The notes under the pieces were generated by a model, which saw only the letters and a list, made by a program, of their open reading frames with translations, did no database searches and was not told the DNA's origin. Both the position numbers and the translations under genes were made by a program. Shown here piece after piece: positions 9,601 to 52,000 of a stretch of 59,788 nt of DNA. Source of the stretch: Vitrella brassicaformis CCMP3155 (taxonomy: Eukaryota > Protista > Chromerida); assembly GCA_001179505.1 (NCBI GenBank), contig CDMY01000519.1, positions 1-59,788 on the forward strand, written 5' to 3'. The first letter of the stretch is position 1; each line of letters starts with the position of its first letter.

Positions 9601-12600
9601 TCCCATCCACCCAGCCATCACTCAGATATGCATGCATCACATCGGAATGGATGGACCCGACCCACTCGCTGTGTGGCTGTCTGTCTGGCTGTCTGTCTGT
9701 CTGGCTTTCCTTGCAAACTTACGCTGGTGAAGGAGAAGAGTCGTTTGAAGCTCTCCGACCCCTCCGGGCACTGTGTCTCCATGTGCTTCTCAGCCTGCAT
9801 CCAACATCACACCCACACCAAGGCCCATACACTCACATGTGTGTGTGTTCCTGGTTGCGGCATCCAGCCAGCCAGCCAGCCAGCCAGCCATACCTCGAGG
9901 AGCCTGGCGCGCTCAATGAGCGGCCGTCTCCTGAGCTCGGCCAGCAGGTGCTGACGCCGGGGATGCGTGGCGATGTCCCGCACCAGCAGGAAGTCCAGCA
10001 CGCTCAGGCCGAGGCTGGATATGGTCACCCTCAGGTGGCACATGACGTAGGCCTTGAAGTAGTCCTCCGAGAGGCTGGCGGTGAGGGCGCTCAGGGTGTC
10101 CTGGCTGGGCACCTCCGAGGGGCCGCCACGCACCTTGTCGGCGAATGACATGCCTGGTTTACCGCCCCACGCAGGCCCGCCGCCGCTCCGCAGCGAGCTG
10201 CTCGGCGACGCACCACCGCCACCACCTCCCGCACTCAAGGCGGGCGAGGGCGCGGCAGCGGCACCACCACCACCACCACCCCCACCCCCACCCGCCGCAT
10301 CCGCAGCTGTCCATGCTGTGTACTGTTGCTCGGGCTCCTCGTCTTGGTCGGTGTCGACTTGGTCTGGCGCTGGTGGTTCTTGTTGCGCGTTGAAGGTGTG
10401 GTCAGCATCATCGGCCGGCGGGGGGAGGGGTTGGGGGGGTGTTGGCTGGTCTGATGGAGGGGGGAATGGGGGTGCGTCCTGGGCCTCGCCATCCTCCTCT
10501 TGGGGCTCTGCAGCAGATGCGTCCACGACCGTCCGCTGCTCCTCGTCACCTCCTGCTGCTGCTGCCGCTCCTGCCGTGGAATCATCCTCCGCCAGGGGTA
10601 GCTCCTCTTGGCCACTCGCCTCTGCGGCTTGGCCGTCTGGTGCCACCTCATGGCCCACCATGCTGCCCTCCATGATGGACAAGGGTGGGGGTGCACGTGT
10701 CTGGCCAGGTGGCATCATGAATGGCGGCGATGGGAGTGTGTCAGGTGGCTGGCTGCTGAGGTTGGCAGCTCGGTGTCTGCTGCTACCCCCGCTGGATGAC
10801 GAGCCTGACTGGTCCAGGTCCACGTATATGCCCCCGTTGGTGTGAATGATACCCCCATGGCCACGGTCCTGCTCGTAGTGGGGCTGCCGGCTGGGCGTCG
10901 AGGGGTGGTCACCATCGCCACCGCCATCTACTGCACCACTCTCGCCCTCCTGACAGACAGACAGACAGACAGACATCAAGGACGACAGACAGACATGGAT
11001 GGACACAGACAGACATGACCATGAATGCGCTCACTGCACTGATGGTGTCAAGCTTGTCTATGCGGCCGGCAAGCCGGCCGTGCGTCCCCCTCTCACCTAC
11101 CTCGGCCTCATCCATGCCTTCGTGCGGCGGCACTTGCAGGCTGACCGGCACCGGACTCACATGTGCAGCTCCCCCCTCCCCATCGGCCGGATTGGGAGGG
11201 GGTGGGTGTGGAAGTGGTGGGCCCTGACTCACACTTACGTGGGGGGGAGACATATGGACGTATGGCGCATGCGGCTGCTGATGCATGGCGCCCATGACCA
11301 CATTCTGCAGACCATACGGCGGTACGTCTGCACCAACACCAGCGCCGCCACCAAAGCCGTTGGTCGGATACTGCACGCCACCATCACCATCACCACCACC
11401 AGGAGCAGGTGCAGCAGCAGGTGGTTGGACCTGCAGAGGCACCGGCATTGGGCTGGTGACCTGGCCATGTAACTGCTGGACGGGTCCCCCTGCCCCGCCG
11501 TCGAAGGGCATGCCCATGGTGCTGAGAGGTGGAGGTGGGGGGTAGGTAGTGGGGTATGAGACAGGGTGGTGGGTCCCACCCACTGGCACGGCCCCTGGGT
11601 GGGGAAGGGGGTGGTGAGGGTGTTGAGGGGCAAGGTGGGGATGGGGGAGGGGGGGNNNNNNNNNNNNNNNNNNNNNNNNNNNNNNNNNNNNNNNNNNNNN
11701 NNNNNNNNNNNNNNNNNNNNNNNNNNNNNNNNNNNNNNNNNNNNNNNNNNNNNNNNNNNNNNNNNNNNNNNNNNNNNNNNNNNNNNNNNNNNNNNNNNNN
11801 NNNNNNNNNNNNNNNNNNNNNNNNNNNNNNNNNNNNNNNNNNNNNNNNNNNNNNNNNNNNNNNNNNNNNNNNNNNNNNNNNNNNNNNNNNNNNNNNNNNN
11901 NNNNNNNNNNNNNNNNNNNNNNNNNNNNNNNNNNNNNNNNNNNNNNNNNNNNNNNACGGTGGAGAGGGGTGGGGGTGGATCGGGGACGGAGGGGGGAACC
12001 CGTAGTCCATCGGGTGGGGCTGACCCAATTGGAATCCTGACGCGTCACCCGGGGGTGGTGCAACGGCCTCTGGTGGCATGTCACAACTTGCCTGCGGGCA
12101 GAAGGAAGGAAAACACACCAACCAAGACCAAGAGCAGAGCACATGTCAGTCAGTGAGGGAGGCTCCATGGCATGCATGGCTTGATTGATCCTTGGAAGGG
12201 GGGTGCGGTGGGGTGCGGTGGTGGGTACCTGAGCGGCTGCAGCGGAGCTGTCAAGGGGAATGGTGGTCATCATCGGTCCTTCAGCCACTCCCAAGTGGCA
12301 CCCACTGCTGATCTCACTGCTTGGCAGCCCGTCCGACACCCTCTGGCTGGCTGCCGCCACCTCAGCGTATTCCACGTCACGGTGCGAGTGACCATGACCC
12401 AGTGCATCTTCACCGTGTACTTGAGCTGACGACTCCTGACGCCCACGGCCCCGCCCCGCCTCGTCGGTGGGTGGGCCTGGGCCACCGGCTGGCTGGTGGT
12501 CTGCTGGCGGTGGCGATGGGTGGTGTGGTGTGCGGTGGTGATGTTGTTGAGGTTGAGGCGGCATCCCCTCTTGTGGCGAGACATCGACGCCATTGAGGAG

Positions 12601-13275
12601 GGCAGCACGGGGAGGGCCATCAGAGTCACCCGATGCCGACGGCGCAGACGCAGACACGCCGTCCGGCTGCTGAACTGGACCGACTTCAGACGCTGTCGGC
12701 TCACGGTCACGATAGGCGTCGCTCTCAGCCACAGATGCCCCCATCGGTGAGACGCTCTCCACCCCATTGTGGCCCCACCCGCTCGTCAGGATGGCTCCCT
12801 CGCCCTCGTGGTCACGGCCGCGGTCTTCAGTACTCCTGCCGGCACTCGATGACGCGTCATCTGTATGTGAGGCCCGTCGGCGGAGGGCCGGCTTCCATGG
12901 CTGCTTGGGGGCCGGCTGCGGAGGCTTCTTCGAGTGCGTTCGGTTCATAGCGTGAGTTAGCACAGAGTCAGATGACGACGGGGCGGCGGGTGCAGGGGCC
13001 GCTGATGCCGCTACGGATGGTGCCGATACTGGTGCGGCCGGTGGTGGGGCCCCTCCCGTGGCGGCCTTGGTCATTCCCTTGGTCCACACGCTGCCTCGTG
13101 GCTGGCTGGATGAGGGCTGCCTGCCGCCGCCGCCCAGACTGGGAAAGTGGTCAGGACTCAACTCGGGCGACTGATCCTCCCCTTGCTGCTGCCGCTGCTG
13201 TGGCTGTGGCTGTGGCTGTTGCTGTTGCTGTTGATCGGTGTCTGCCGGTTCATCTCGAGAGCTGCTGCCGTTCAT
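6603..13275 (-). CDS. Ubiquitin-specific protease (C19), USP10/Ubp3-like, with long Gln/Pro/Ala-rich N-terminus; spans an assembly gap
   Basis: Cys box RGLKNSKNFCYVNSV (~9525-9570), QQDVHEFTIFLLNSLHEE (~8570-8620), VDFPEKLVI, His box YELTAVIKHHGTTLSHGHYNAYVR, YLFDDSVV, final exon NASMLVYV...GAG*. Confidence 0.85.
11656..11955. other. Assembly gap (300 N) after a G-run
   Basis: N run seen directly. Confidence 1.
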
Positions 13276-18538: not shown

Positions 18539-20384
18539 TCATATGACGGTGATTTTCGGCCCCTCGGTGGCCCTGCCCACGGCCTTCTGCAGATAGGAAG
18601 TCAGGCTCTCAAGGCTGCTGGACGGCACATGCAACACCTGAACACACGCAGACCACAGCACAAACAACCAGCCGAGCCAAGCTTGTGTCCCGGGTGGGGT
18701 GCGGGAGTGGAGTGTGTGGTGGCTCTGACATCGCATGCGGGCACGGGGCTCTTGTCGAATCTCTTGGCCCCTGAAAACTCCACCTGGTTGGCAAACGCTT
18801 CATCATTTAACCAACACACCACACATCACACATAGATAAGTACTGCTGGTCTGCGACGTGACGCGAGTGCGTGTGTGTGCGTACACATGCCCCAGTAGAA
18901 GAAGCGCGAGACGTTTTTTGAGAGCCTGAGAAGCCCCGGTGAGACCCGGTTGACCTGTGCGCTCTCGCCCCTGCTGCCCATGAGGGTCTTGCACAGACTC
19001 AAGATCTGCTCTGTCGTCAAAGGCTGGATGGACCACACACACACACACACACACAGATGGATGGATGGATGGATGGAACAAACAGAACCGGACGATTTAT
19101 TTATGGAACACGATGGATGGCATGGATGGGCAACGCAATGCAACGCACCTGTGGCCCAACGAGGTCCAAGATCTTGTTCTCGGCCCCGGGAAGCTCCAGC
19201 GCCCTGATGGATTTATACATACATACATCACATCCACACGTGTGTGCGTGCAGTACGTACAAGACAGGCATAAGAAACAACAAATATCAGCCGGTCTGTC
19301 TGGCTGGCTGTCCGGCTGTCTGTCTGTGTGTCAGACATGCATGCATAGAAGTACCTGAGTGAGTAAGTACCTGAGTGCGAGTCTGCCGGCATCTTCCTCC
19401 GCGATGTAGGGCACTCCCTCATCGCCCTGTCCCTCTGGCGGCAGATACACGGGCTCGCCCAGCTGCATCGGACGAATGAACTCACTCACCACACCTACAC
19501 GTACACATACACATACACACGCATACCATACACACACGCATGTGCACGCACATACACACGTCCGTCGGTCGGTGTGTTGGATGCAGTCAGTCAGTCAGTC
19601 AGTCAGTGGGTGTGTTGATGCGGTGGCTGTTGTCAGTCACTGACCGCTGTAGAATCCGGGGACCCTGAGGATGGTGTAGGGCACGTCCGAGTCCTGAATG
19701 ACGTTCTCCATGACGTACTTGTACTTGACCCGCGCCACGTCGAGGAACCGCTCGGCGTCTGTCACGCTGAAGAAGACCAGCCGCTTGACCTGCGCTGCCT
19801 CGCACGCCGCTACCAACGCATACTTGCCCTCCCAGTCAATCTGCACGCAATATACATGCATACCCGCACACGCACCGCACCGGACAGGACACAGATCCCA
19901 TCCCGACAGGCAAGGCGTGCGTCGGGTCGGGTGTCGTGTCGGACCTTTCTCTGGGCTTCGAGTTCGATGGCTCGTGTGGCTGATGCGTCGATGACGGCCG
20001 TGACGCCCGCCAGCGCCCCTGGGAGGGTCTCAGGCAGACTCAGGTCACCATACACTATCTCAGCTCCCCAGTCTGACAGAATGGACCCCTTGCTGCACAC
20101 ACACACATCCATCCATCTATCCATCCATGCATCCACCAGGGCGGACAAGCAGTGCAGGTGTCGTCCCTTTCACTCACTCACTCACGTCGACCGGCCCACC
20201 CAGCTACCTACCGTGGTGATCTGAGGATGCATCTGACGTCATATCCCCGGTCGATGGCATTCTTGACAATGATGCGGCCCACTGTGCCGGTGCCGCCCAG
20301 CACCAGCAGCTTGCCGGGCACAGGGGGCGCCATCATACGCAGGGACCGTGACAAACCGACGCGATTGTGTGGTGGATTGGGTAC
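18539..20384 (-). CDS. ycf39: Ycf39/HCF244-like atypical SDR (NAD(P)-binding, PSII assembly family); 5' end unresolved
   Basis: [101 protein letters not shown]. Confidence 0.75.
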
Positions 20385-20791
20385 CTGAACAACACAAAAA
20401 GGACAATGTGAAAGCAAGCCATTGACAGACAGTGGCTGTCAGGCAAATCCATGGTTCTGCGTACGTGTCTGTGTGTCAAGGGGACCGGCTGCCTCCTCAA
20501 GACATTCCGGTGCGGTCCTTGGAAAGCGACGCCTGAAGGCAGACACGAATGAGATCAGATCATCATGATGCAATTCGATTTGCCGTCCGTCCGTCGTGCG
20601 CACCTGATGGGTCGAATGGCGTCCTGCTGGTGTGTGCATTGGCAGTCCATGGCAGCCACGCGCACACCCAGCAGAGCAGCCATCTGCACAAGCGCATGGC
20701 TGCCTGCATCGACAGATCTGTGGTGCTCCTTCTCCCTCCTTTTTTGGGTGGCTAAGCTCGCGTAGATCTGTGAGGTCGGCGAATTCATGAC

Positions 20792-23700
20792 ATGAGGGTG
20801 GCGGTCTGGTGCATCTTGTGGTGCCTGCATTCGACATCTGCACTTGCATTTGTGGTGAGGTGCATGGAGCGCCATGCTGCCCCGCAGCTGCTGAATGTCG
20901 ATGCTTTGCTTCACTCATGTGTGGCGGCCATGGCCATCCATCTCTGCTCTGTGTCTGTCTGTGACATGCAGGTGGTCCGTCCGACGGCAAACAGCGGGTC
21001 ATTTCGGCAACACAGCCGCAGTCGGCGTTTGCTCCGCACCGCCACCAGCATGACGACGGCCGTTAACGGCGGACCCAAGGAGGTCGGTGATTCACTCACT
21101 GAGACCACTCTTACATGAGTGGCAGCCAGCCAGACAGATGAGTGGGTGTGCGGTCTGTGTGCATGGCATGGCATGCAGGATTATCTGGCCGTGCATGTAT
21201 TCGGCGAAGTGACGGCCGGCAACGAAAAGGACTTTGCGACGGCGAGCCATGCCAACGCCAAGAACTCGGTTAACGAGGCTGGGGTGGCAAGGTTCGACTT
21301 TCTGCGGGGCGAGGCTGACCCGTCGCGCTTCTGCCTCATCGAAGGTGCGACACATACACTCATGGATGGCTGGCTGGACGGCAGATGGGTTATTCCGTGG
21401 TGACCTGCTGTGGCATGTGCATCTCTTCTCTTCTCTTCTGTCCTCTCTCTCTCTCTCTTGCCGCCGCTCCTGAATTGAAGTCTACAAGGACAAAGGTGAC
21501 AGAGACAGACAGACAGACAGACAAAAAGGCAAACAGACTTGCTGGCGTTCCGTTCCAGCAAACACACGCCACGTACATCACGCGGACGCCTCGCCTCTTG
21601 TCTGTCCTGTCTGTCCCCTTGAATACATCCATCCATCCATCCATTTAGATGCTCCCGCAGCCCACAAGGAGACGGCGCACTACAACACCTGGCGGTCGAC
21701 AGTGCAGGAGTGGATGGCTGAACCACGGAGCGCCAAGAAGTACACCCCCATATTCCCACCCGCTGCCTATTGGGACATCGAGGCGTCGGCCAGCGAGTCG
21801 CCCAGCCCCCTCGATGCCACAGAGACACCACTGCTCTGCGTCATGGTCGATGTGCAGGTAGACAGACAGACAGACAGACAGACCCACCGGACCGCTAGCT
21901 AAGCGGCTGGCTGGCTGGCAGGAAGGCAGGAAGGCAAGCCAACAAACAGGCGGTGTTTGTTCACCTGTCGTGCGTGGCTTTGGCTGGTGTGTTGTGCTGT
22001 GTGTAGGTGAAGGAGGGTTACGAGGAGGCTTTCATCCAGGCGACACGTGCCAACTGCGAGTGCTCGGTGCGTGAGCCTGGGGTGTCGCGATTTGACCTGC
22101 TGCGCAACAATGACGACCCCTGCAACTTTGTGTTGGTGGAGGTCTACAACAACCCGGAGGCTCCCGCGCTACACAAGGTATGATACCTACCTACTTGAGG
22201 GGGGGCTCAGATATATGCTCGCACCGGCAATGAAGGACAATCGTGGCCAATGTCCCTCATTGACGGTGTAGGAGACGAAGCACTACCAGACGTGGCGCGA
22301 GACGGTGCAGGAAATGATGGCTCGGCCCAGGCAGAGCGAGAAGTTTATCACACAATTTCCATCCAGGTCGGTCAGTTTGTAGGGCGGCACACACATCGCA
22401 CCGAGCGCATCACACACAGTCAGTCAAGGATGGACGCGACGCCCTTCTGTGGGCTCACCCACTCACTCACTCACTCACTCGTGGCTGACTGGCTGACTGG
22501 CTGCACTCACTGCGTATATGTGTGTGTATGTGTGGATATATGTGATGGATGTGTGGGATGTGTGTCCCTCCCTAGGGTCCACTGGCACCGTGTGGAGGCC
22601 CTGACACACAAGCCCCTCACAGAGCCACTGGGCTTCCCGGGAACCTTCGAATTCGGTTGGTCAAACACACAGAACACAGAGCTCCCTCCCTCCCTCCCTT
22701 GACATAAATCACACAAATGAATGCCATGCCGTGCATGACCTGACTGACCCGCCCACACACGTACGGTACGCGTACCTACGTCCGTCCCTTGTGTGTGGTG
22801 TGTGCGTGTATGTGTGCAGTATCTGCGGGCAAAATCATGTTTGGGAAGGGGTGTGCGTCTAAGCTGCCTGGGATTGTCAAGAAGGCCGGCAAGTCGCGGG
22901 CCCTCATCGTAACGGGCAGCCACGGACAGGACCGACACAAACACATCATCGACTCACTCACAGTAAGTCACCCACACACACACACACACACAGACACTCT
23001 TTACATATATGTGGACACCCATTCATTGTTGGCACCATATGTATGTGGATGTGTGTGTGTGTAGGATGAGGGCATCTCGTGCGCGTTCATGAGCATCGGC
23101 AAGGAGCCAACCGTCGAGGACGTCCGCGCCGGCACACAGGCCGCCAGAGACGCCGGATGCGACACAGTCAGCCCCTGCACACACACACACACACTCACAC
23201 ACACACACACACGCGCACACACACACAGAGAGAGAGAGAGACACTTCGCTGCCTGGACATTTCCCCTCCCTGTGTGTGTCCTGCAGGTTATATCGATTGG
23301 TGGCGGGAGCGCAATCGATGCAGGCAGGTTCTTGTGGATGTGGCTATGCTTACATGCCATGTGTGGACATATGCGGCTCTTTGTATGGACGCCTGTCGAC
23401 GCAGGCAAGGCGATCGCATCTCTGCTGGCCAACGGGGGCGACCCCTTGGACTACATGGAGGTTATTGGGAAGGGCATGCCCATCACACAGCCATCCGTCC
23501 CCTTCTACGCTCTGCCCACCACTTCCGGCACCGGAAGTGAAGTTACCAAAAATGCCGTACTCGCCTCACTACAACACAAACAAAAGGTAGCGAGGGAAAG
23601 AGCTTCGTAAGTGGCGCGGGGTGGGTGGTGAGCTCGCCGTGTGCATATCGAGATGGATTGGGCACTCTATCTCTCTCGCTCTCTCTCTCGCTCTCTCTCT

Positions 23701-25190
23701 CTCTCTCTTTCTCTCTCTGTGTGTGTGTGTGTGTAGGCGTCGATGCGGTCTGAGCTGATGCTGCCGACGATGGCGATTGTTGACCCGATGCTGACGGTGT
23801 CTGCCCCATGCAACGTTACCGCTTCCACCGGCCTGGACGCACTCACGCAGGTATGCTGGATGGATGGGTGGATGCCATACGTCCAGACACACACGCGCAC
23901 CCTTCACGGAGTAATGGGTCGTCCTCAGTGCATCGAGCCATATGTGAGTCACCTGGCGAATCCGCTGACGGATGCTTTGGCCAAGGAGGGCATCAAGAGG
24001 GCAGCCAGGAGCCTCCGGGCCGCTTACAGAGACCCCAAGGACATCGCCGCACGAGAGGAAATGGTCAGTCAGCCAGTCAGTCACAAATACATACATGCGA
24101 TGCGCACACGAGTCACTCCTCGACTCCTTGACTCATTCACTCACTAACTGACTGCAGGCTCTGGCGTCTGTCTTGGGTGGGTTGTCTCTGGCCAACGCCA
24201 AGCTAGGTGCTGTCCATGGCTTTGCTGGTGTCCTGGGGGGCTTATACCCTACTGCGGCCCACGGCGCCATCTGCGCCGCACTACTGCCCTTTGTCTTCGA
24301 GATGAACGTCGCAGCACTCTCAGACGAATACGTACGTGGGCATTCCCTCCCGTTGACGGATACCAGCCCCCGATGGATGGATAGATGGATGAGTGGGCAT
24401 TCTCTGTCTGTCCGTTTACTTACGTGTCTGTCTGTTGTCTCCCCCGCCCCATTCAGAGCCGCACGCAGGACCCGGCCGTCGTGCGGAGGTTGGCGAAGTT
24501 CACGGAAGTGGCCAGGATAGTCACCAGTGAGTCAGTCACCAACCAGGCCTGGCCTGACGCACACAAGACACGCAACAGGCAGCCCTCCCTGTGTAGCATC
24601 CATCCATGCGTCCACCGTTTGACTATTCCTCCTTGTTCATGTGTGTGATGACGGGTCGATCAACCGATCGATCTATCTTGTGGCGATCGATCGATCAGAC
24701 AATCCCGATGCGACGGCTGAGGAGGGCGCCGAGTGGCTCAGTGCCCTTGCCACGGACCTTCATGTGCCACTCCTGGGTGAGTAGCTAGGCGAGTGCCTGT
24801 GCGGCCATGACAGCTTACGTTGATCTTATTTTGTGGTGTCTTATGAAGGCGAATACGGGCTCACCCCAGACCAGTTTCACAAGGTGGGTGCGTGGGTGGG
24901 TGGGAGCTAGGACAGTGAGTGCTGTGCTGCATTGATTGCTCGTACAACCCACGGCCTGGCTGCATACATGCGCTGCACGTGTGGTCTGTGGTTGGTTGGT
25001 TGGTTGGTTGGTGGGTTGGACAGGTCGCAGAGGTCAGCGCGGCGTCGAGTTCGATGAAAGGCAAGTTCGATGAAAGGCAATCGCGTACACAAATGCTCAC
25101 ACACTGACGTATGATGAATACATACGTTCAGGTAATCCTGTGCAGCTCTCCATCGACCAGCTCAAGACCATCCTCAAACAAGCCACCTAG
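20792..25190 (+). CDS. Fusion: signal+transit-like peptide, two ABM (LsrG-like) domains, iron-containing alcohol dehydrogenase
   Basis: Leader MRVAVWCILWCLHSTSALAF. ABM1 ANAKNSVNEAGVARFDFLR..CLIEVY..HKETAHYNTW; ABM2 ANCECSVREPGVSRFDLLR..LVEVY..HKETKHYQTW. Fe-ADH GGGSAIDAGK, PTTSGTGSEVT, DALTQCIE, LGAVHG, AAHGAICA. Splice phases checked at several junctions were consistent. Confidence 0.87.
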
Positions 25191-25732
25191 CGAATGGCTG
25201 TGGCGCGTTCATATTGTGTGCGTGCATTTATCATCGTTGGTGTGTGTGGGGGGCGGGCAGGCGGGCGGGCGTGTTCGCTGCGGTCTGTTGTGTTGTATTG
25301 TGTTGTGTGGGTGGCGGGCTGCATGCATCTCTCGATAGCGAGAGGCTGCACATTTTTAGGACTGTGCATCGTATGCGAATGAGACAAGGCTTAGAGTCAA
25401 TCGGACATTATTCGTCGAAACCTTTTTACGCTTCAGTAGGGTAGGTATGTGGTGCGCACATATCCTGGCCACTCTGCATTCAGCCAGCTTTCCTGGCCTT
25501 GGCAAGCTTCTGGCGTAGGGCACTGCACCCCGGAAGCAAGCCAAGCCATATATATCGATCGCATCGACTGCTTACAGTACAGTACAGGTATATGTACTGT
25601 CATCAGCTATCGACTGTCATCAAGCTGACATGGTGTCATACGCCAGCCCAATCTATCTATCCCTCAATCTATCTATATATATCTGAGGGAGCAAAGCCCC
25701 CGGTGCAGTGGCAGTGACCACTGGCTCGATGT

Positions 25733-49098: not shown

Positions 49099-52000
49099 TC
49101 AGTCTGAGTTGACGGCTGTGGCGAGCAGCTTGCCGCCTCCCTGCTCTAGCCTCTCCGTCAGCCTCCCCTTGGCAGCCAGAATCAAACCCAGAAACACTGG
49201 CGATGGCGACATTGGCCTGCAGGAACCAACCACACACACACAACAACCAACCAAGCAGAGAGGAGACATGGACGGCGATCGTCCTGCCAGCCAGCCAGCC
49301 AGCCCAGGGCGGGGAGGTGGTGTGCTCAGGTACCTGGATTTGAATTCCGGGTGGAACTGTGTGCACACGAAGTAGGGATGGTCGGGAATCTCACCTATCT
49401 GCACCACACATCGCATACATACGCATAGATGACACACATACATATTCACTACCATCAAACCTCACGTGAGCCCCGCCCATCCGCCCGCCCCGGCAGCGTG
49501 CGTACGGTACCTCCATTCTCTGTCCGTCCTGGTCGTGTCCCGTGAAGATGAAGCCCTTGGACTCCAACGCTGCCACCATCGCTGGATTCACCTCATACCT
49601 CACCAAACACACACACACATTCAGCCAGCCAAAGCAAGCCACCAAATAAATGCAATGCGTACCTACCGTAAACTAACACTCCCTCCCTCCCTCCCACTCA
49701 AGTAAGGACATGTATGTGTGTTATATACATACCTGTGTCTGTGTCGTTCGTGAATAGTGTGCTGGTGATCGTACAGCTTGAAGGCCAAAGACGACGGGTC
49801 CCTGCACACACACCCAATGCCTCCGTGTCATTCGTGTGTACGTCATGTCTGTCTAGTGGTGGGCGCGTATGTCATACGATACGCGATGCGATGCGATGGA
49901 TGCCATGCATACTTGATGATGGTTGGTCTGGTTCCCAGCCTCATGGTGCCTCCCATGTGCGTCTGGGACACCTCAGGCATGAACACCACCACTAATCAAT
50001 CGCACACACACAGCCGGGGGGGGGGGGGGGGGGGNNNNNNNNNNNNNNNNNNNNNNNNNNNNNNNNNNNNNNNNNNNNNNNNNNNNNNNNNNNNNNNNNN
50101 NNNNNNNNNNNNNNNNNNNNNNNNNNNNNNNNNNNNNNNNNNNNNNNNNNNNNNNNNNNNNNNNNNNNNNNNNNNNNNNNNNNNNNNNNNNNNNNNNNNN
50201 NNNNNNNNNNNNNNNNNNNNNNNNNNNNNNNNNNNNNNNNNNNNNNNNNNNNNNNNNNNNNNNNNNNNNNNNNNNNNNNNNNNNNNNNNNNNNNNNNNNN
50301 NNNNNNNNNNNNNNNNNNNNNNNNNNNNNNNNNNGCAGACAGACAGACAGACAGACGGACTGAAGGCGCTCAGCAAATGAGCGAGTGAGTGATCCATAGC
50401 TATCTATGTCCGATGTGGTTGGTTGATCGGGTAGGCCATCGTTAGGTAGGTAAGTACCTTTTTGTGTGGTGTCTTTGTCGAACTCTTCAGAGTTGGCATT
50501 GTCCATCTGCAGCACCTCCCTGCATTCCATTCACACACACACACACGTCCGTACATGCAGTAAGTACATGCTTGCTATGTACCCAAACACACACACGGTT
50601 ACTTACTTATACGCACACGCACCCACTTGTATATACGTGAGGTGAATCCATACATGCGATGCGATGCGCAAATATCATATGTATGCGTGCCGTGCCGTGC
50701 GTGTGATGGTCATTTCCTTCCTCCGCCATCCATCCATCCATGCATCTGACTGACAGACTGACCTTGCGAATTCGATGACGGCGGTTTGCAGGCCCAAGCA
50801 AATGCCGAGGTAAGGCTTGCCATCTGTGTAGTGTATGATAGATTGATACGATACACAGCACGCAGAACGAACGCACACCAATGCATTCATTATTGGATGC
50901 AGGCAGGAAGGGAGGACAGACAGAGGGTGGGGTGGCAAGTAAGTCACATAAATACATGCATGTCCTTGCCGCCCTTTTCTGTTGTGAATGGTATGCATAC
51001 GTCAAGTTAGTTAGTTCACTTACTTTGTCTGCAGAATCGTGCTGACAGTGCCTTTCCCTCGATGCCACGGTCACCAAAACCTCCTGATTGATTGATATAT
51101 GACAGACAACCCACCCACCAACACACACGCAACCCCCGCCCACACCACAAGGTGTGTGTTATCATTTGCTTTGCCGTGTCGTTTGTTAGTTATGTGTGCA
51201 GGTAGTACCGTAGTACCTACCTGGACAGAGGACCCCCTCGACGGCCTGTATTTTCCTCCACGCCTCATCGTACTTGTCGGCACACTCATGCTGCATCTAC
51301 ACACCCATGGACACACACACACACACAGACTCAGAGGCATGAGAGAGACGCAAACACCACACAGACACAGGTGCTCGTGTGCAGTGCACGCACCCCCTCC
51401 TTGCCCGGCTGCCCTCTCTGACGGTAGCCGTATATGTGGGTGTGGGTGTATTCTATCGACCTCCGTCCGTCGGTACCTGCGGCTCTAGATCTGTGGATTC
51501 GATCCAGCAGATGTCGACCTTGAGGCCCGCCTCAGTGGCCGCATGATTGAGGGCTTTGATGACCGACAGGTACGAATCCGACAACCCCGTGTACTTGCCA
51601 ACCACACCTATTGTGACCTGCAGAGGTCCCACAACCAACGGATGGATGGATGGACAAACAACATACACACCACCTCACATGAGGCCGACCAACGGACGAA
51701 CGGACCCCCTCCCTCCCTGCCTGCCTGCCTGTCTTGCACTCCCTACAACCCACCGTACGTACGGACCGTTTCCTCAATGGCGTCGACTCGTTGGGCCATT
51801 TTGGCCCAGTTGGCCAGGTTGTAGGGCACCATGAGGTGCCGATTCTTGGCCAAAGGACTCAGCGGACGGGGGTGCAAATGCAGACGCTGCAGTGCACACG
51901 CACAACCACCACATGTTTACACAATACTTAACTGCCTGTCACGCACAAGAAATCTGCTCTCCCTCTGCGTGTGTGTGAGAGCGTACGTCGCATATGAGTG

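What the first reader, a model, noticed from the sequence alone, without database searches (positions are those of the whole stretch)
20792..25190. Putatively plastid-targeted LsrG-LsrG-Fe-ADH fusion: candidate metabolite-repair enzyme
Seen: one spliced gene encodes a hydrophobic signal ending ALAF, an R/S/T-rich transit-like stretch, two complete ABM domains and a full Fe-ADH. Both ABM domains keep Asn, Glu and His at the positions matching the E. coli LsrG catalytic residues (N25/E54/H70). Known: LsrG isomerises phospho-AI-2, a phosphorylated pentane-2,3-dione; chromerids use form II Rubisco; Rubisco misfires give 2,3-pentodiulose-1,5-bisphosphate. Inference: a fusion of bacterial origin, coupling isomerisation and NAD(P)H reduction of a reactive dicarbonyl sugar-phosphate in the plastid. 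AI-2 quenching is an alternative. I am not aware of a characterised function for this architecture.
Basis: partly seen in the sequence, partly recalled or inferred. Interest (0 to 1): 0.8.

Follow-up and report, generated by a model that had tools for sequence, protein, structure and literature searches.

The report
Plastid-addressed LsrG-like isomerase–alcohol dehydrogenase fusion
This alga makes one protein that joins two copies of a small LsrG-like isomerase to an iron-type alcohol dehydrogenase; it is the fused form of a two-gene pair found side by side in many bacteria, and it probably converts and then reduces a small reactive carbonyl compound whose identity is still unknown.

Summary
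Window 20792-25190 (+) is a 20-exon gene encoding 691 aa. Spliced contigs from four public runs (three studies) show one mRNA running from the 5'UTR through both ABM domains into the Fe-ADH.

The protein has these parts:
- a signal peptide ending ALA|F;
- an acid-free, S/T/R-rich transit-like stretch;
- two LsrG-like ABM domains, each keeping N25/E54/H65/H70 (E. coli LsrG numbering);
- a complete group-III Fe-ADH.

New here:
- In at least seven bacterial lineages, a single LsrG-like ABM gene sits directly upstream of the same Fe-ADH subfamily. Nothing else nearby is conserved.
- That subfamily has Gln where the second metal-binding His normally is.
- The eukaryotic fusions (Vitrella, Chromera, Chrysophaeum, Mallomonas, Epipyxis, environmental algae) form one clade for each of the three domains, next to those bacterial pairs.
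- The same ABM subfamily is separately fused to DkgA/B-like aldo-keto reductases, once in a heterotrophic diplonemid.

This supports bacterial origin and isomerase-reductase coupling. The ABM domains are not LsrG equivalogs (57 and 70 bits against a cut-off of 135). The Rubisco by-product idea is unsupported: most bacterial carriers are groups usually described as heterotrophs, and several algal orthologues lack a plastid leader. The substrate is unknown. I found no paper on this architecture. The scan's notes did not hold this finding on other DNA.

The parts
20792..25190 (+). Whole coding region, 20 exons, 691 aa. Exons: 20792-20854, 20972-21082, 21179-21344, 21481-21495, 21649-21857, 22007-22177, 22272-22366, 22576-22655, 22820-22962, 23065-23166, 23287-23323, 23405-23586, 23737-23850, 23929-24063, 24158-24331, 24457-24526, 24699-24776, 24849-24883, 25024-25060, 25132-25190.
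   Evidence: Model and translation. Spliced RNA contigs in four runs. Identical to database protein P0001 up to aa 622.
20752..20791 (+). 5' UTR as far as the RNA contig reaches. It contains an in-frame TGA at 20771 and a 2-codon upstream ORF starting at ATG 20787.
   Evidence: X7 record 4 starts at 20752; sequence read.
20792..20848 (+). Signal peptide, aa 1-19, ending ...STSALA. The next residue is Phe.
   Evidence: Hydropathy and composition. Phe at +1 is typical of chromerid plastid leaders: PMC6668581.
20849..21076 (+). Transit-peptide-like stretch, aa 20-56, interrupted by intron 1. It has no homology to the bacterial proteins.
   Evidence: 27% S+T, 16% R+K, no acidic residue. Bacterial ABM proteins begin where aa 57 aligns.
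21077..21773 (+). ABM domain 1 (aa 57-160), LsrG-like. It spans exons 2-5, including the 15-nt micro-exon 21481-21495.
   Evidence: Pfam ABM. NF007791 57.3 bits. N/E/H/H conserved. AF2 pLDDT about 97.
21828..22585 (+). ABM domain 2 (aa 179-280), LsrG-like, about 50% identical to domain 1 over the exon-3/exon-6 stretch by my hand count.
   Evidence: Pfam ABM. NF007791 69.5 bits. PDB 2OMO 2e-11, then LsrG 2GFF and 3QMQ. Foldseek rmsd 0.9 A to 3QMQ.
22640..25187 (+). Fe-ADH domain (aa 299-691). It has the GGGS dinucleotide motif at aa 390, IVTG (Gly where NAD-type enzymes have Asp) at aa 333, and the metal motif GLDALTQ at aa 490, with Gln in place of the usual His.
   Evidence: Pfam PF00465 and PF25137. 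PDB best hit 8ZRL, 6.9e-55. 56-60% identity to 384-aa bacterial Fe-ADHs. Motifs.
23324..23404 (+). GC-AG intron (81 nt, in frame). It is flanked by a 7-nt repeat, so the cut is ambiguous by 7 nt, and GC..AG is the only canonical reading.
   Evidence: Joint 23319->23401, skips 81, both=7, in all four runs; model.
25061..25131 (+). GC-AG intron (71 nt). Its donor GCAAGT lies in the first copy of a perfect 16-nt tandem duplication (25049-25064 and 25065-25080).
   Evidence: Joint 25058->25130, skips 71, both=3, in all four runs; sequence.

Best explanation
This is an expressed nuclear gene of a chromerid alga. An earlier scan note names the alga as Vitrella brassicaformis. The gene encodes a two-step carbonyl-processing enzyme that carries a plastid-type address.

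What the protein looks like. The N-terminal 56 residues are a bipartite leader: a signal peptide, then Phe at +1, then a transit peptide. The two ABM domains pack against each other into one LsrG-like alpha+beta barrel, replacing the homodimer that the bacterial single-domain proteins would form if they behave like the solved LsrG/2OMO proteins (ArqI's basic unit is a homodimer). Both domains keep the LsrG residue set, so there are probably two active sites. The C-terminal half is a group-III iron-type alcohol dehydrogenase of an uncharacterised subfamily. That subfamily has Gln in place of the second metal-binding His, and Gly followed by basic residues where NAD-specific members have Asp, which suggests NADPH.

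Proposed mechanism (inferred). The ABM part performs a cofactor-free, enediol-type shift of a carbonyl along a small alpha-dicarbonyl or alpha-hydroxy-carbonyl compound, as LsrG does on P-DPD. The substrate may be anionic or phosphorylated. The dehydrogenase then reduces the carbonyl that is exposed, using NAD(P)H. Together this removes or salvages a reactive metabolite. The order of the two steps is not known.

Origin. The gene descends from a bacterial two-gene pair (ABM gene directly upstream of the Fe-ADH gene). After transfer, the ABM was duplicated and the genes fused, before the algal lineages that carry the fusion diverged.

Shown: the gene structure, the single mRNA, the domain identities, the conserved residues, the bacterial gene pair, one clade for each of the three domains, and the parallel AKR fusion.
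Inferred: the chemistry, the cofactor, the plastid location and the substrate class.
For: - Gene and mRNA.
- Domains.
- ABM subfamily: the only NCBIfam hit is LsrG NF007791, aligned over the full profile, at 50-83 bits for the algal and bacterial members. The best PDB matches are 2OMO, then LsrG 2GFF and 3QMQ. N25/E54/H65/H70 are conserved in all 24 ABM domains of the fusions and in all 12 bacterial partners.
- Fold: the AF2 model of the tandem region has pLDDT 93.9 and pTM 0.89. It matches the tandem ABM structure 3F44 as a whole, and each half matches 2OMO and LsrG at 0.7-1.0 A.
- Bacterial pair: an ABM ORF lies directly upstream on the same strand in 9 of the 13 distinct loci whose Fe-ADH scores best against Vitrella. 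It is also present in two Synechococcus, a deltaproteobacterium and a second Pirellulales contig. A tandem-ABM gene followed by an Fe-ADH gene occurs in L088/L089. No other neighbour is conserved.
- Phylogeny: the eukaryotic Fe-ADH domains form one clade (SH-aLRT 100) beside the ABM-linked Chloroflexota. Eukaryotic ABM1 (96/83), eukaryotic ABM2 (99/97) and the bacterial partner ABMs (99/99) are three clades that meet at one node (92/86).
- Independent fusion to DkgA/B-like AKRs.
- An LsrG-like ABM (ArqI) shares an operon with a glyoxalase and is induced by glyoxal: PMC12274486.
- Leader: with PMC6668581.
Against: - No substrate is identified, and no member of either subfamily has been characterised.
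- The ABM domains fall far below the LsrG equivalog cut-off, so the chemistry could differ.
- ABM proteins also include cofactor-free oxygenases and non-enzymatic regulators (ArqI itself acts as an inhibitor).
- The His-to-Gln change at a metal ligand could mean different metal use or altered catalysis.
- Plastid targeting rests on inspection only; no predictor was run and no localisation was done. Orthologues differ in their N-termini.
- The sister relation to Chloroflexota in the Fe-ADH tree is weak (80-85, quick search), and that eukaryotic clade also took in one misplaced long-branch bacterial row, L076. The donor is therefore not resolved.
Confidence: 0.6

Rival explanations
1. Repair of Rubisco or RuBP side products. 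The enzyme acts in the plastid on 2,3-pentodiulose phosphates that arise from RuBP: either PDBP, or the beta-elimination product 1-deoxy-2,3-pentodiulose 5-phosphate. The latter has the same constitution as LsrG's substrate P-DPD.
For: - The leader is plastid-type in both chromerids and in several other algal orthologues.
- The LsrG-type residue set is conserved.
- PDBP is a known Rubisco misfire product, and its only known disposal is by a phosphatase (PMC9833046).
- The gene pair is present in marine Synechococcus.
- That the RuBP beta-elimination product has the P-DPD skeleton comes from my own chemical knowledge and was not checked in a paper here.
Against: - Most bacterial carriers belong to groups usually described as heterotrophs: Chloroflexota Anaerolineae and Caldilineae, Pirellulales, Bacteroidales, Gemmatimonadales and Riflebacteria. 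Rubisco presence was not checked.
- Algal orthologues P0153, P0154, P0156, P0011 and P0021 have no leader, and P0017 and P0015 look mitochondrial.
- The AKR version occurs in a diplonemid.
- The gene pair is not next to carbon-fixation genes in Synechococcus.
Confidence: 0.12
2. The dehydrogenase acts first and the ABM is an oxygenase. The Fe-ADH oxidises an alcohol or diol to an enolisable carbonyl. The ABM part then acts on it as a cofactor-free oxygenase or quinol-monooxygenase-type enzyme, in a catabolic or biosynthetic route.
For: - The ABM family is named after cofactor-free monooxygenases.
- One database source labels a member of the tandem-ABM cluster (P0171) 'quinol monooxygenase YgiN'.
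- From my own knowledge, YgiN works alongside a reductase (MdaB).
Against: - Sequence and fold are closest to LsrG and 2OMO, with the LsrG residue set intact.
- No entry named YgiN appears in the PDB sequence search, even at E <= 10.
- The pattern around the dinucleotide site suggests NADPH, which would favour reduction (inference).
- The AKR partners are DkgA/B-like carbonyl reductases.
Confidence: 0.13
3. Breakdown of the bacterial signal AI-2: the protein isomerises and reduces phospho-AI-2 (P-DPD) taken up from surrounding bacteria.
For: - LsrG is the only named family the ABM domains match.
- One source labels a homologue as the P-DPD isomerase and another as 'autoinducer 2-degrading protein'.
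Against: - The domains are below the equivalog cut-off.
- No conserved neighbour of any kind, kinase, thiolase or transporter included, lies next to the bacterial pairs.
- A plastid address makes an extracellular signal an unlikely substrate.
- DPD also forms spontaneously from ribulose 5-phosphate inside cells (PMC2443158), so activity on DPD-like compounds need not involve signalling.
Confidence: 0.07
4. Non-catalytic role: the ABM part senses or binds a small aldehyde, or regulates a partner protein as ArqI does, and the Fe-ADH part is regulatory as ErcA is.
For: - ArqI is an LsrG-like ABM that acts by binding PqsA (PMC12274486).
- ErcA, a regulatory Fe-ADH, is among the best NCBIfam matches.
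Against: - The full LsrG residue set is conserved in both domains across all fusions.
- The GGGS motif and three of the four metal ligands are kept in the ADH.
- ErcA scores are under half its cut-off.
Confidence: 0.05

Closest known systems
LsrG, (4S)-4-hydroxy-5-phosphonooxypentane-2,3-dione isomerase (E. coli b1518; PDB 3QMQ, 2GFF)
   Same: - Same fold: each repeat superposes at about 0.9-1.0 A.
- Alignment covers the full length of the NF007791 profile.
- Asn25, Glu54, His65 and His70 are conserved, as are the RFD and PR motifs.
   Different: - Only 33-38% identity in the structural alignment.
- 57 and 70 bits against a cut-off of 135, while E. coli LsrG scores 192.
- Two domains in one chain instead of a homodimer.
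- Fused or adjacent to a reductase rather than sitting in an lsr operon with a kinase, a thiolase and a transporter.
2OMO, Nitrosomonas europaea 'DUF176' putative ABM protein (structural genomics, function unknown)
   Same: It is the closest solved structure by sequence (2e-11 for a 57-aa exon) and by fold (rmsd 0.7-1.3 A, 42-49% identity).
   Different: It is a single domain with no known function. I did not examine its genomic context.
ArqI (PA0709) of Pseudomonas aeruginosa, an LsrG-like ABM in the arqI-gloA2 glyoxal-response operon (PMC12274486)
   Same: It is an LsrG-like ABM that is genetically coupled to an enzyme that disposes of alpha-oxoaldehydes.
   Different: - The partner is a glyoxalase, not a reductase.
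- ArqI is a hexamer that acts by protein binding.
- Its modified Arg49 and Cys68 are reported not to be conserved in the wider LsrG family.
Group-III Fe-ADHs: lactaldehyde reductase FucO, 1,3-propanediol dehydrogenase DhaT, methanol dehydrogenase (PDB 8ZRL, 3BFJ, 1RRM)
   Same: - Same two-domain fold family.
- GGGS motif present.
- Asp and two His metal ligands present.
- Alignable over the whole domain.
   Different: - The second metal ligand, His, is replaced by Gln throughout the subfamily: 118 of the 120 closest stand-alone proteins and nearly all loci.
- No NCBIfam equivalog reaches even half of its cut-off.
- Gly replaces the Asp that marks NAD-specific members.
Tandem ABM proteins 3F44 (Lactobacillus) and 3MCS (Fusobacterium), 'putative monooxygenases'
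   Same: They have the same two-repeat pseudo-dimer architecture (TM 0.80-0.84 by target).
   Different: Only 14-18% identity, function unknown, and no reductase attached.

Membership tests
LsrG equivalog (NCBIfam NF007791, EC 5.3.1.32) | Whole-protein score at or above the curated cut-off of 135 bits | tested here: not met
   ABM1 scores 57.3 bits and ABM2 69.5 bits. The Chromera domains score 50.5 and 62.1, the bacterial partners 55-83, and E. coli LsrG 191.8.
LsrG equivalog (NCBIfam NF007791, EC 5.3.1.32) | Residues reported as catalytic (Asn25, Glu54, His65, His70) | tested here: met
All four are present in both domains, in all 12 fusion proteins aligned and in the bacterial partners.
LsrG equivalog (NCBIfam NF007791, EC 5.3.1.32) | Genomic association with lsrK, lsrF and the lsrACDB transporter | tested here: not met
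   Clustering of neighbouring ORFs in 16 bacterial loci found only the ABM and the Fe-ADH conserved. Pfam on selected neighbours found no Lsr-type genes.
LsrG equivalog (NCBIfam NF007791, EC 5.3.1.32) | Isomerisation of P-DPD to P-HPD | not testable with these tools
   This needs an enzyme assay.
ABM / dimeric alpha+beta barrel (Pfam PF03992) | Pfam gathering score reached, and a ferredoxin-like beta-alpha-beta repeat that pairs into a barrel | tested here: met
   89.2 bits against a cut-off of 23.1, with two stretches. The AF2 model has pLDDT 93.9 with two beta-alpha-beta-beta-alpha-beta repeats. Foldseek gives 3F44 at E 1.3e-15.
Iron-containing alcohol dehydrogenase (Pfam PF00465 + PF25137) | Both Pfam domains above cut-off, and the GGGS dinucleotide motif | tested here: met
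   157.3 and 101 bits. GGGSAID starts at aa 390.
Iron-containing alcohol dehydrogenase (Pfam PF00465 + PF25137) | Canonical metal ligands Asp, His, His, His | tested here: not met
   The motif is GLDALTQ, with Gln in place of the first His, and this holds across the subfamily (alignment to 8ZRL). In that same alignment the other two His align with His of 8ZRL.
Lactaldehyde reductase FucO (TIGR02638), 4-hydroxybutyrate DH (NF058672), ErcA (NF041833) | Equivalog cut-offs of 523, 500 and 550 bits | tested here: not met
   The best scores are 186-246 bits for the algal domains and the bacterial homologues.
Bipartite plastid-targeting sequence of red-lineage complex plastids | Signal peptide, aromatic residue or Leu at +1 after the cleavage site, then a transit peptide rich in hydroxylated and basic residues and poor in acidic ones | tested here: inconclusive
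   By inspection all three features are present, and they are shared with Chromera (AGA|F). The motif is described in PMC6668581 and PMC8233740. SignalP and ASAFind are not available here, and there is no localisation data.

The most novel reading that the evidence does not exclude
The ABM plus Fe-ADH pair, and its algal fusion, is a dedicated, widespread and so far unrecognised system for damage control or salvage of metabolites. Its targets would be 1-deoxy-2,3-pentodiulose-type compounds (DPD or P-DPD) that form spontaneously from ribulose 5-phosphate and RuBP. In plastids it would reduce the isomerised or native dione, possibly to a 1-deoxy-pentulose 5-phosphate such as DXP. That would return lost pentose-phosphate carbon to the MEP pathway.
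Probability: 0.1. Interest if true: 0.85.

Novelty: new variant of a known kind. Interest (0 to 1): 0.55.

Why it matters
Three independent lines of gene-association evidence point the same way:
- a conserved two-gene pair in at least seven bacterial lineages;
- a single-origin fusion in chromerid and ochrophyte algae;
- a separate fusion of the same ABM subfamily to an unrelated reductase family.

Together they say that an LsrG-type isomerase works with an NAD(P)H carbonyl reductase. No member of either subfamily has a known substrate, and I found no paper on the architecture.

This gives people who study metabolite damage and repair, or LsrG chemistry, a defined candidate. It is a soluble single-chain enzyme with simple bacterial equivalents, including in marine Synechococcus, and it can be assayed directly. 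It would also extend LsrG-type chemistry beyond AI-2 signalling.

On a practical level, the public gene model for this locus (662 aa) ends inside an intron and should be corrected to 691 aa.

Tried and rejected
- **Spliced protein not submitted.** The spliced 691-aa protein has no reference, so I did not type it into any tool. I used exon references, the database protein P0001 and local scripts instead. No tool has therefore seen the last 69 residues of the Vitrella protein; they were checked only against homologues in scripts.
- **Marques 2011 (LsrG mutagenesis)** is not held. The ArqI paper does not name LsrG catalytic residues.
- **The protein-atlas search** was busy for P0001. For the Chromera orthologue it returned only generic bacterial Fe-ADH clusters.
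- **Neighbourhoods looked at for hints to the substrate.**
  - Synechococcus MIT S9507 gave nothing informative: an FAD oxidoreductase, GXWXG and ArgRS.
  - Verrucomicrobia, which carry the Fe-ADH without an ABM, have housekeeping neighbours.
  - One Chloroflexota-type locus without an ABM has a class II aldolase and a PfkB kinase nearby. This hints at a lactaldehyde-type substrate but is a single case.
- **The 97-aa 'single ABM' P0023** turned out to be an exon of an intron-containing algal fusion gene that a prokaryotic gene caller had split. The count of 80 'single ABM' clusters therefore overstates stand-alone proteins.
- **The bacterial tandem-ABM operon L088/L089** was rejected as the direct donor. 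Its Fe-ADH is only 35% identical and its ABMs 39%, against 53% (Fe-ADH, P0236) for the single-ABM type.
- **QQ-2, the metagenome AI-2 quencher,** is an SDR and is not related.
- **The supplements of the chromerid targeting paper** hold no entry for this protein under the words I tried.
- **Taxon labels** for most environmental homologues could not be obtained.

Full report
**1. Is it there?**

Yes. Reading 20300-25700 and joining exons by hand gives a 20-exon open frame from ATG 20792 to TAG 25188-25190, encoding 691 aa. Seventeen introns are GT-AG and two are GC-AG (23324-23404 and 25061-25131). Exon 4 is a 15-nt micro-exon (21481-21495).

One call of read laying on 20700-25300 placed contigs from four runs (X1, X2, X7, X8; three studies) that lack the introns.
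- Thirteen of the 19 joints are listed outright. The micro-exon appears as the inserted letters at joint 21344->21647. Both GC-AG introns appear, each with the expected positional ambiguity.
- The joints around exons 5-6, 7-9, 9-12 and 12-13 are not listed. The contig pieces abut or the lengths between them fit the model to the nucleotide (for example 176, 138 and 110 nt in X1 record 1).
- The 24883->25024 joint is supported only indirectly, by the side lengths (37 and 34) of the neighbouring joints.
- X7 record 4 begins at 20752 and continues through both ABM domains into the Fe-ADH. An in-frame TGA at 20771 fixes the start codon. This is therefore one mRNA, not two genes.
- The runs are contigs, so depth says nothing about expression level.

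**2. The public model is wrong at its end.**

The exhaustive search returned P0001 (662 aa), the database's protein for this locus. It equals my model up to aa 622 and then reads on into intron 16. All four runs splice 24526->24699. My C-terminus (...SSMKGNPVQLS...) matches the homologues' ...SSTKGNPV.LS....

**3. Domains.**

- Pfam on P0001 finds ABM twice, plus Fe-ADH and ADH_Fe_C. The exon pieces agree.
- In NCBIfam the only family the ABM parts hit is LsrG (NF007791), aligned over the whole 96-position profile. The scores are 57.3 and 69.5 bits against a cut-off of 135; E. coli LsrG itself scores 191.8.
- The closest solved proteins to exon 6 are 2OMO (N. europaea, function unknown), then Yersinia and E. 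coli LsrG.
- An alignment with E. coli LsrG (taken from locus L004) shows Asn25, Glu54, His65 and His70, and also the RFD and PR motifs, in both Vitrella domains, in every Fe-ADH fusion and in the bacterial partners.
- By my hand count over the exon-3/exon-6 stretch, the two domains are about 50% identical to each other.
- An AlphaFold model of aa 52-292, built on a 34-row alignment, is confident: pLDDT 93.9, pTM 0.89. It matches the two-repeat ABM protein 3F44 as a whole (TM 0.84 by target). Each half matches 2OMO and LsrG at 0.7-1.0 A. So the tandem is an intramolecular version of the LsrG-type dimer.

**4. The dehydrogenase.**

- The Fe-ADH half aligns over its full length with methanol, 1,3-propanediol and lactaldehyde dehydrogenases at about 1e-40 to 1e-55. 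It reaches no NCBIfam equivalog; the best scores are 186-246 bits against cut-offs of 500 or more.
- It is 56-60% identical to a large set of 384-aa bacterial proteins labelled only 'iron-containing alcohol dehydrogenase'.
- The subfamily has a hallmark. The second metal ligand, the His of the usual D-x-x-x-H motif, is Gln (GxDAxTQ). This holds in 118 of the 120 closest stand-alone proteins, in all the algal fusions where the motif search landed on the Fe-ADH, and in nearly all related bacterial loci. More distant Fe-ADHs in the same search keep His.
- After the first beta-strand the sequence is IVTG-S-H-G-Q-D-R-H-K. From general knowledge of this family, Asp at the position of that Gly marks NAD-specific enzymes, while Gly followed by basic residues marks NADP users. 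I therefore infer NADPH. This was not tested.

**5. Where else does the architecture occur?**

An exhaustive HMMER search with the 57-aa exon 6 found 508 proteins at E <= 1e-3. Among the 165 proteins fetched, local domain mapping gave:
- 24 ABM-ABM-FeADH;
- 4 ABM-ABM-AKR;
- 55 ABM-ABM;
- about 80 single ABM.

At least one 'single' is an exon of a split algal gene, so the last count is too high.

Named carriers of the Fe-ADH fusion are Chromera velia (UniProt A0A0G4GPB0, 59% identity over the ABM region), Chrysophaeum taylorii and Mallomonas, and Epipyxis. An intronless environmental copy lies next to a nuclear PsbU gene.

The AKR domains are DkgA/DkgB-like. From general knowledge, this group includes methylglyoxal-reducing enzymes. 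One AKR fusion comes from the heterotrophic diplonemid Namystynia.

**6. Bacterial ancestry.**

- Looking up genomic places for close bacterial Fe-ADHs showed, in a Chloroflexia genome, an ABM gene 60 nt upstream on the same strand. Its product is far closer to the Vitrella ABM domains than E. coli LsrG is (alignment and tree).
- A scan of species-representative genomes with that Fe-ADH gave 80 loci.
- An LsrG-like ABM ORF abuts the Fe-ADH upstream in Chloroflexota (4 species), Gemmatimonadales, Pirellulales (2), Riflebacteria, Bacteroidota (2), a deltaproteobacterium and two marine Synechococcus. That is 9 of the 13 distinct loci whose Fe-ADH scores best against Vitrella.
- A large Verrucomicrobiaceae clade has the Fe-ADH without an ABM.
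- Clustering of all neighbouring ORFs found nothing else conserved. The pair is therefore a self-contained two-gene unit.
- A more distant operon (L088/L089) has a 221-aa tandem ABM gene followed by a Gln-type Fe-ADH gene.

**7. Trees.**

- On the Fe-ADH domain, all eukaryotic sequences form one clade (SH-aLRT 100). It lies inside the Gln-type bacterial radiation, weakly sister (80-85) to the ABM-linked Chloroflexota (quick search; one long-branch bacterial row, L076, is misplaced inside the clade).
- On the ABM domain, there are three well-supported clades joined at one node (92/86): eukaryotic ABM1 (96/83), eukaryotic ABM2 (99/97) and the bacterial partner ABMs (99/99). E. coli LsrG and the ABMs of the AKR fusions lie outside.
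- Both halves thus point to the same kind of bacterial pair. The duplication and fusion happened once, before the carriers diverged. The AKR fusions arose separately; in one of them the two ABMs are each other's sisters.
- The root and the donor are not established.

**8. Targeting.**

- Residues 1-19 are hydrophobic and end in ALA. Phe follows. Residues 20-56 have no acidic residue and are rich in S, T and R. Homology to the bacterial ABMs begins at residue 57.
- Chromera has the same layout (...SAGA|F...). Several environmental orthologues have a signal peptide plus F or L at +1.
- Chrysophaeum and others start directly with the ABM. Epipyxis and P0015 carry mitochondrial-looking presequences. 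P0005 has only a signal peptide.
- Both chromerids are reported to have Phe just after the cleavage site of plastid proteins, less strictly in Vitrella (PMC6668581).
- I rate a plastid location for the Vitrella protein as likely, about 0.7-0.75, but it is a prediction.

**9. What it does.**

- The gene pair, the fusion and the convergent AKR fusion make functional coupling of the LsrG-like part with an NAD(P)H carbonyl reductase the firmest inference.
- LsrG moves a carbonyl along a hydroxy-dione by proton transfers, without a cofactor. The intact residue set argues for the same kind of chemistry on a related small substrate.
- An LsrG-like ABM that is co-transcribed with a glyoxalase and induced by glyoxal (ArqI, PMC12274486) is an independent link between this ABM branch and reactive dicarbonyls.
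- The lack of any conserved transporter, kinase or regulator fits the disposal of an endogenous reactive compound better than it fits a nutrient pathway.
- DPD forms spontaneously from ribulose 5-phosphate (PMC2443158). This source exists in every cell and is concentrated in plastids, which makes DPD-type compounds reasonable candidates.
- PDBP is a documented Rubisco misfire product (PMC9833046). However, the taxonomic spread of the pair and the varied addresses of the algal orthologues argue against a Rubisco-specific role.
- That chromerids use form II Rubisco is general knowledge that I did not verify here (one search found only a reference-list mention).

**10. Novelty.**

Both domain families are well known, and the fusion is already in public databases as an unnamed 'ABM domain-containing protein'. 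As far as the held literature shows, three things are undescribed: the conserved bacterial pair, its single-origin algal fusion, and the parallel AKR fusion. I call it a new variant of a known kind. It is a well-founded lead for enzymology rather than a surprise.

Noticed in passing
window 24457-24700 (exon 16 / intron 16): The public protein model for this locus (P0001, 662 aa) misses the donor at 24526 and reads into the intron to a stop, which replaces the true last 69 residues with about 40 intron-encoded ones. All four RNA runs splice 24526->24699.
   Followed up: yes
window 24526->24655: There is a minor alternative joint (skips 128, ends GT..GG) at low depth in X7 and X8 only. It would change the frame. 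It may be noise or a rare misspliced form.
   Followed up: no
window 25049-25080: A perfect 16-nt tandem duplication (GTTCGATGAAAGGCAA, twice) spans the end of exon 19. Each copy offers a GC donor, and the RNA uses the first.
   Followed up: partly
window 21624-21650 and 22680-22700: Depth here is very high (up to 4557) and many contigs have loose ends. These short stretches (catccatcc... and ccctccctccc...) are simple repeats in introns that are shared with many other transcripts or loci. They are not part of the gene's signal.
   Followed up: partly
window introns, e.g. 22960-23064, 23167-23286, 23640-23736: Many introns carry (CA)n or (CT)n runs near the 5' side and (GT)n runs before the acceptor. 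This agrees with another first-stage note on this stretch (s1-197309). I did not analyse it.
   Followed up: no
downstream of window 25190: The X1 transcript contig (4016 nt) extends about 1.9 kb beyond the stop codon. This is either a long 3' UTR or an assembly merged with a neighbouring transcript.
   Followed up: no
loci L001-L072; proteins P0176-P0295: A whole Fe-ADH subfamily has Gln instead of His at the second metal ligand (GxDAxTQ). Two Bacteroidota members (L015, L016) have His there. The consequences for metal binding are unknown.
   Followed up: partly
P0034, P0037, P0018/P0165: These are tandem LsrG-like ABM domains fused to a DkgA/B-like aldo-keto reductase; P0037 is from the diplonemid Namystynia karyoxenos. 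In P0034 and P0037 the second ABM has lost the Asn/His residues, so it is probably only structural.
   Followed up: partly
L088 5001-7017 (and L089): This bacterial operon has a 221-aa tandem ABM gene followed 20 nt later by a 443-aa Gln-type Fe-ADH gene. A single lost stop codon would turn it into a fusion. It is only 35-39% identical to the algal protein.
   Followed up: partly
P0176, P0177, P0230; P0157: Some algae appear to carry the two halves as separate proteins, each with an N-terminal extension (clearly signal-peptide-like in P0176 and P0157): an Fe-ADH alone (428-458 aa), and a tandem ABM alone (370 aa). Fusion and fission both seem to occur.
   Followed up: no
window 50001-51000; 10001-13000: There is a sharp composition change: GC is 0.36 at 50-51 kb against about 0.56 elsewhere, and it swings 0.66 / 0.46 / 0.65 at 10-13 kb.
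   Followed up: no
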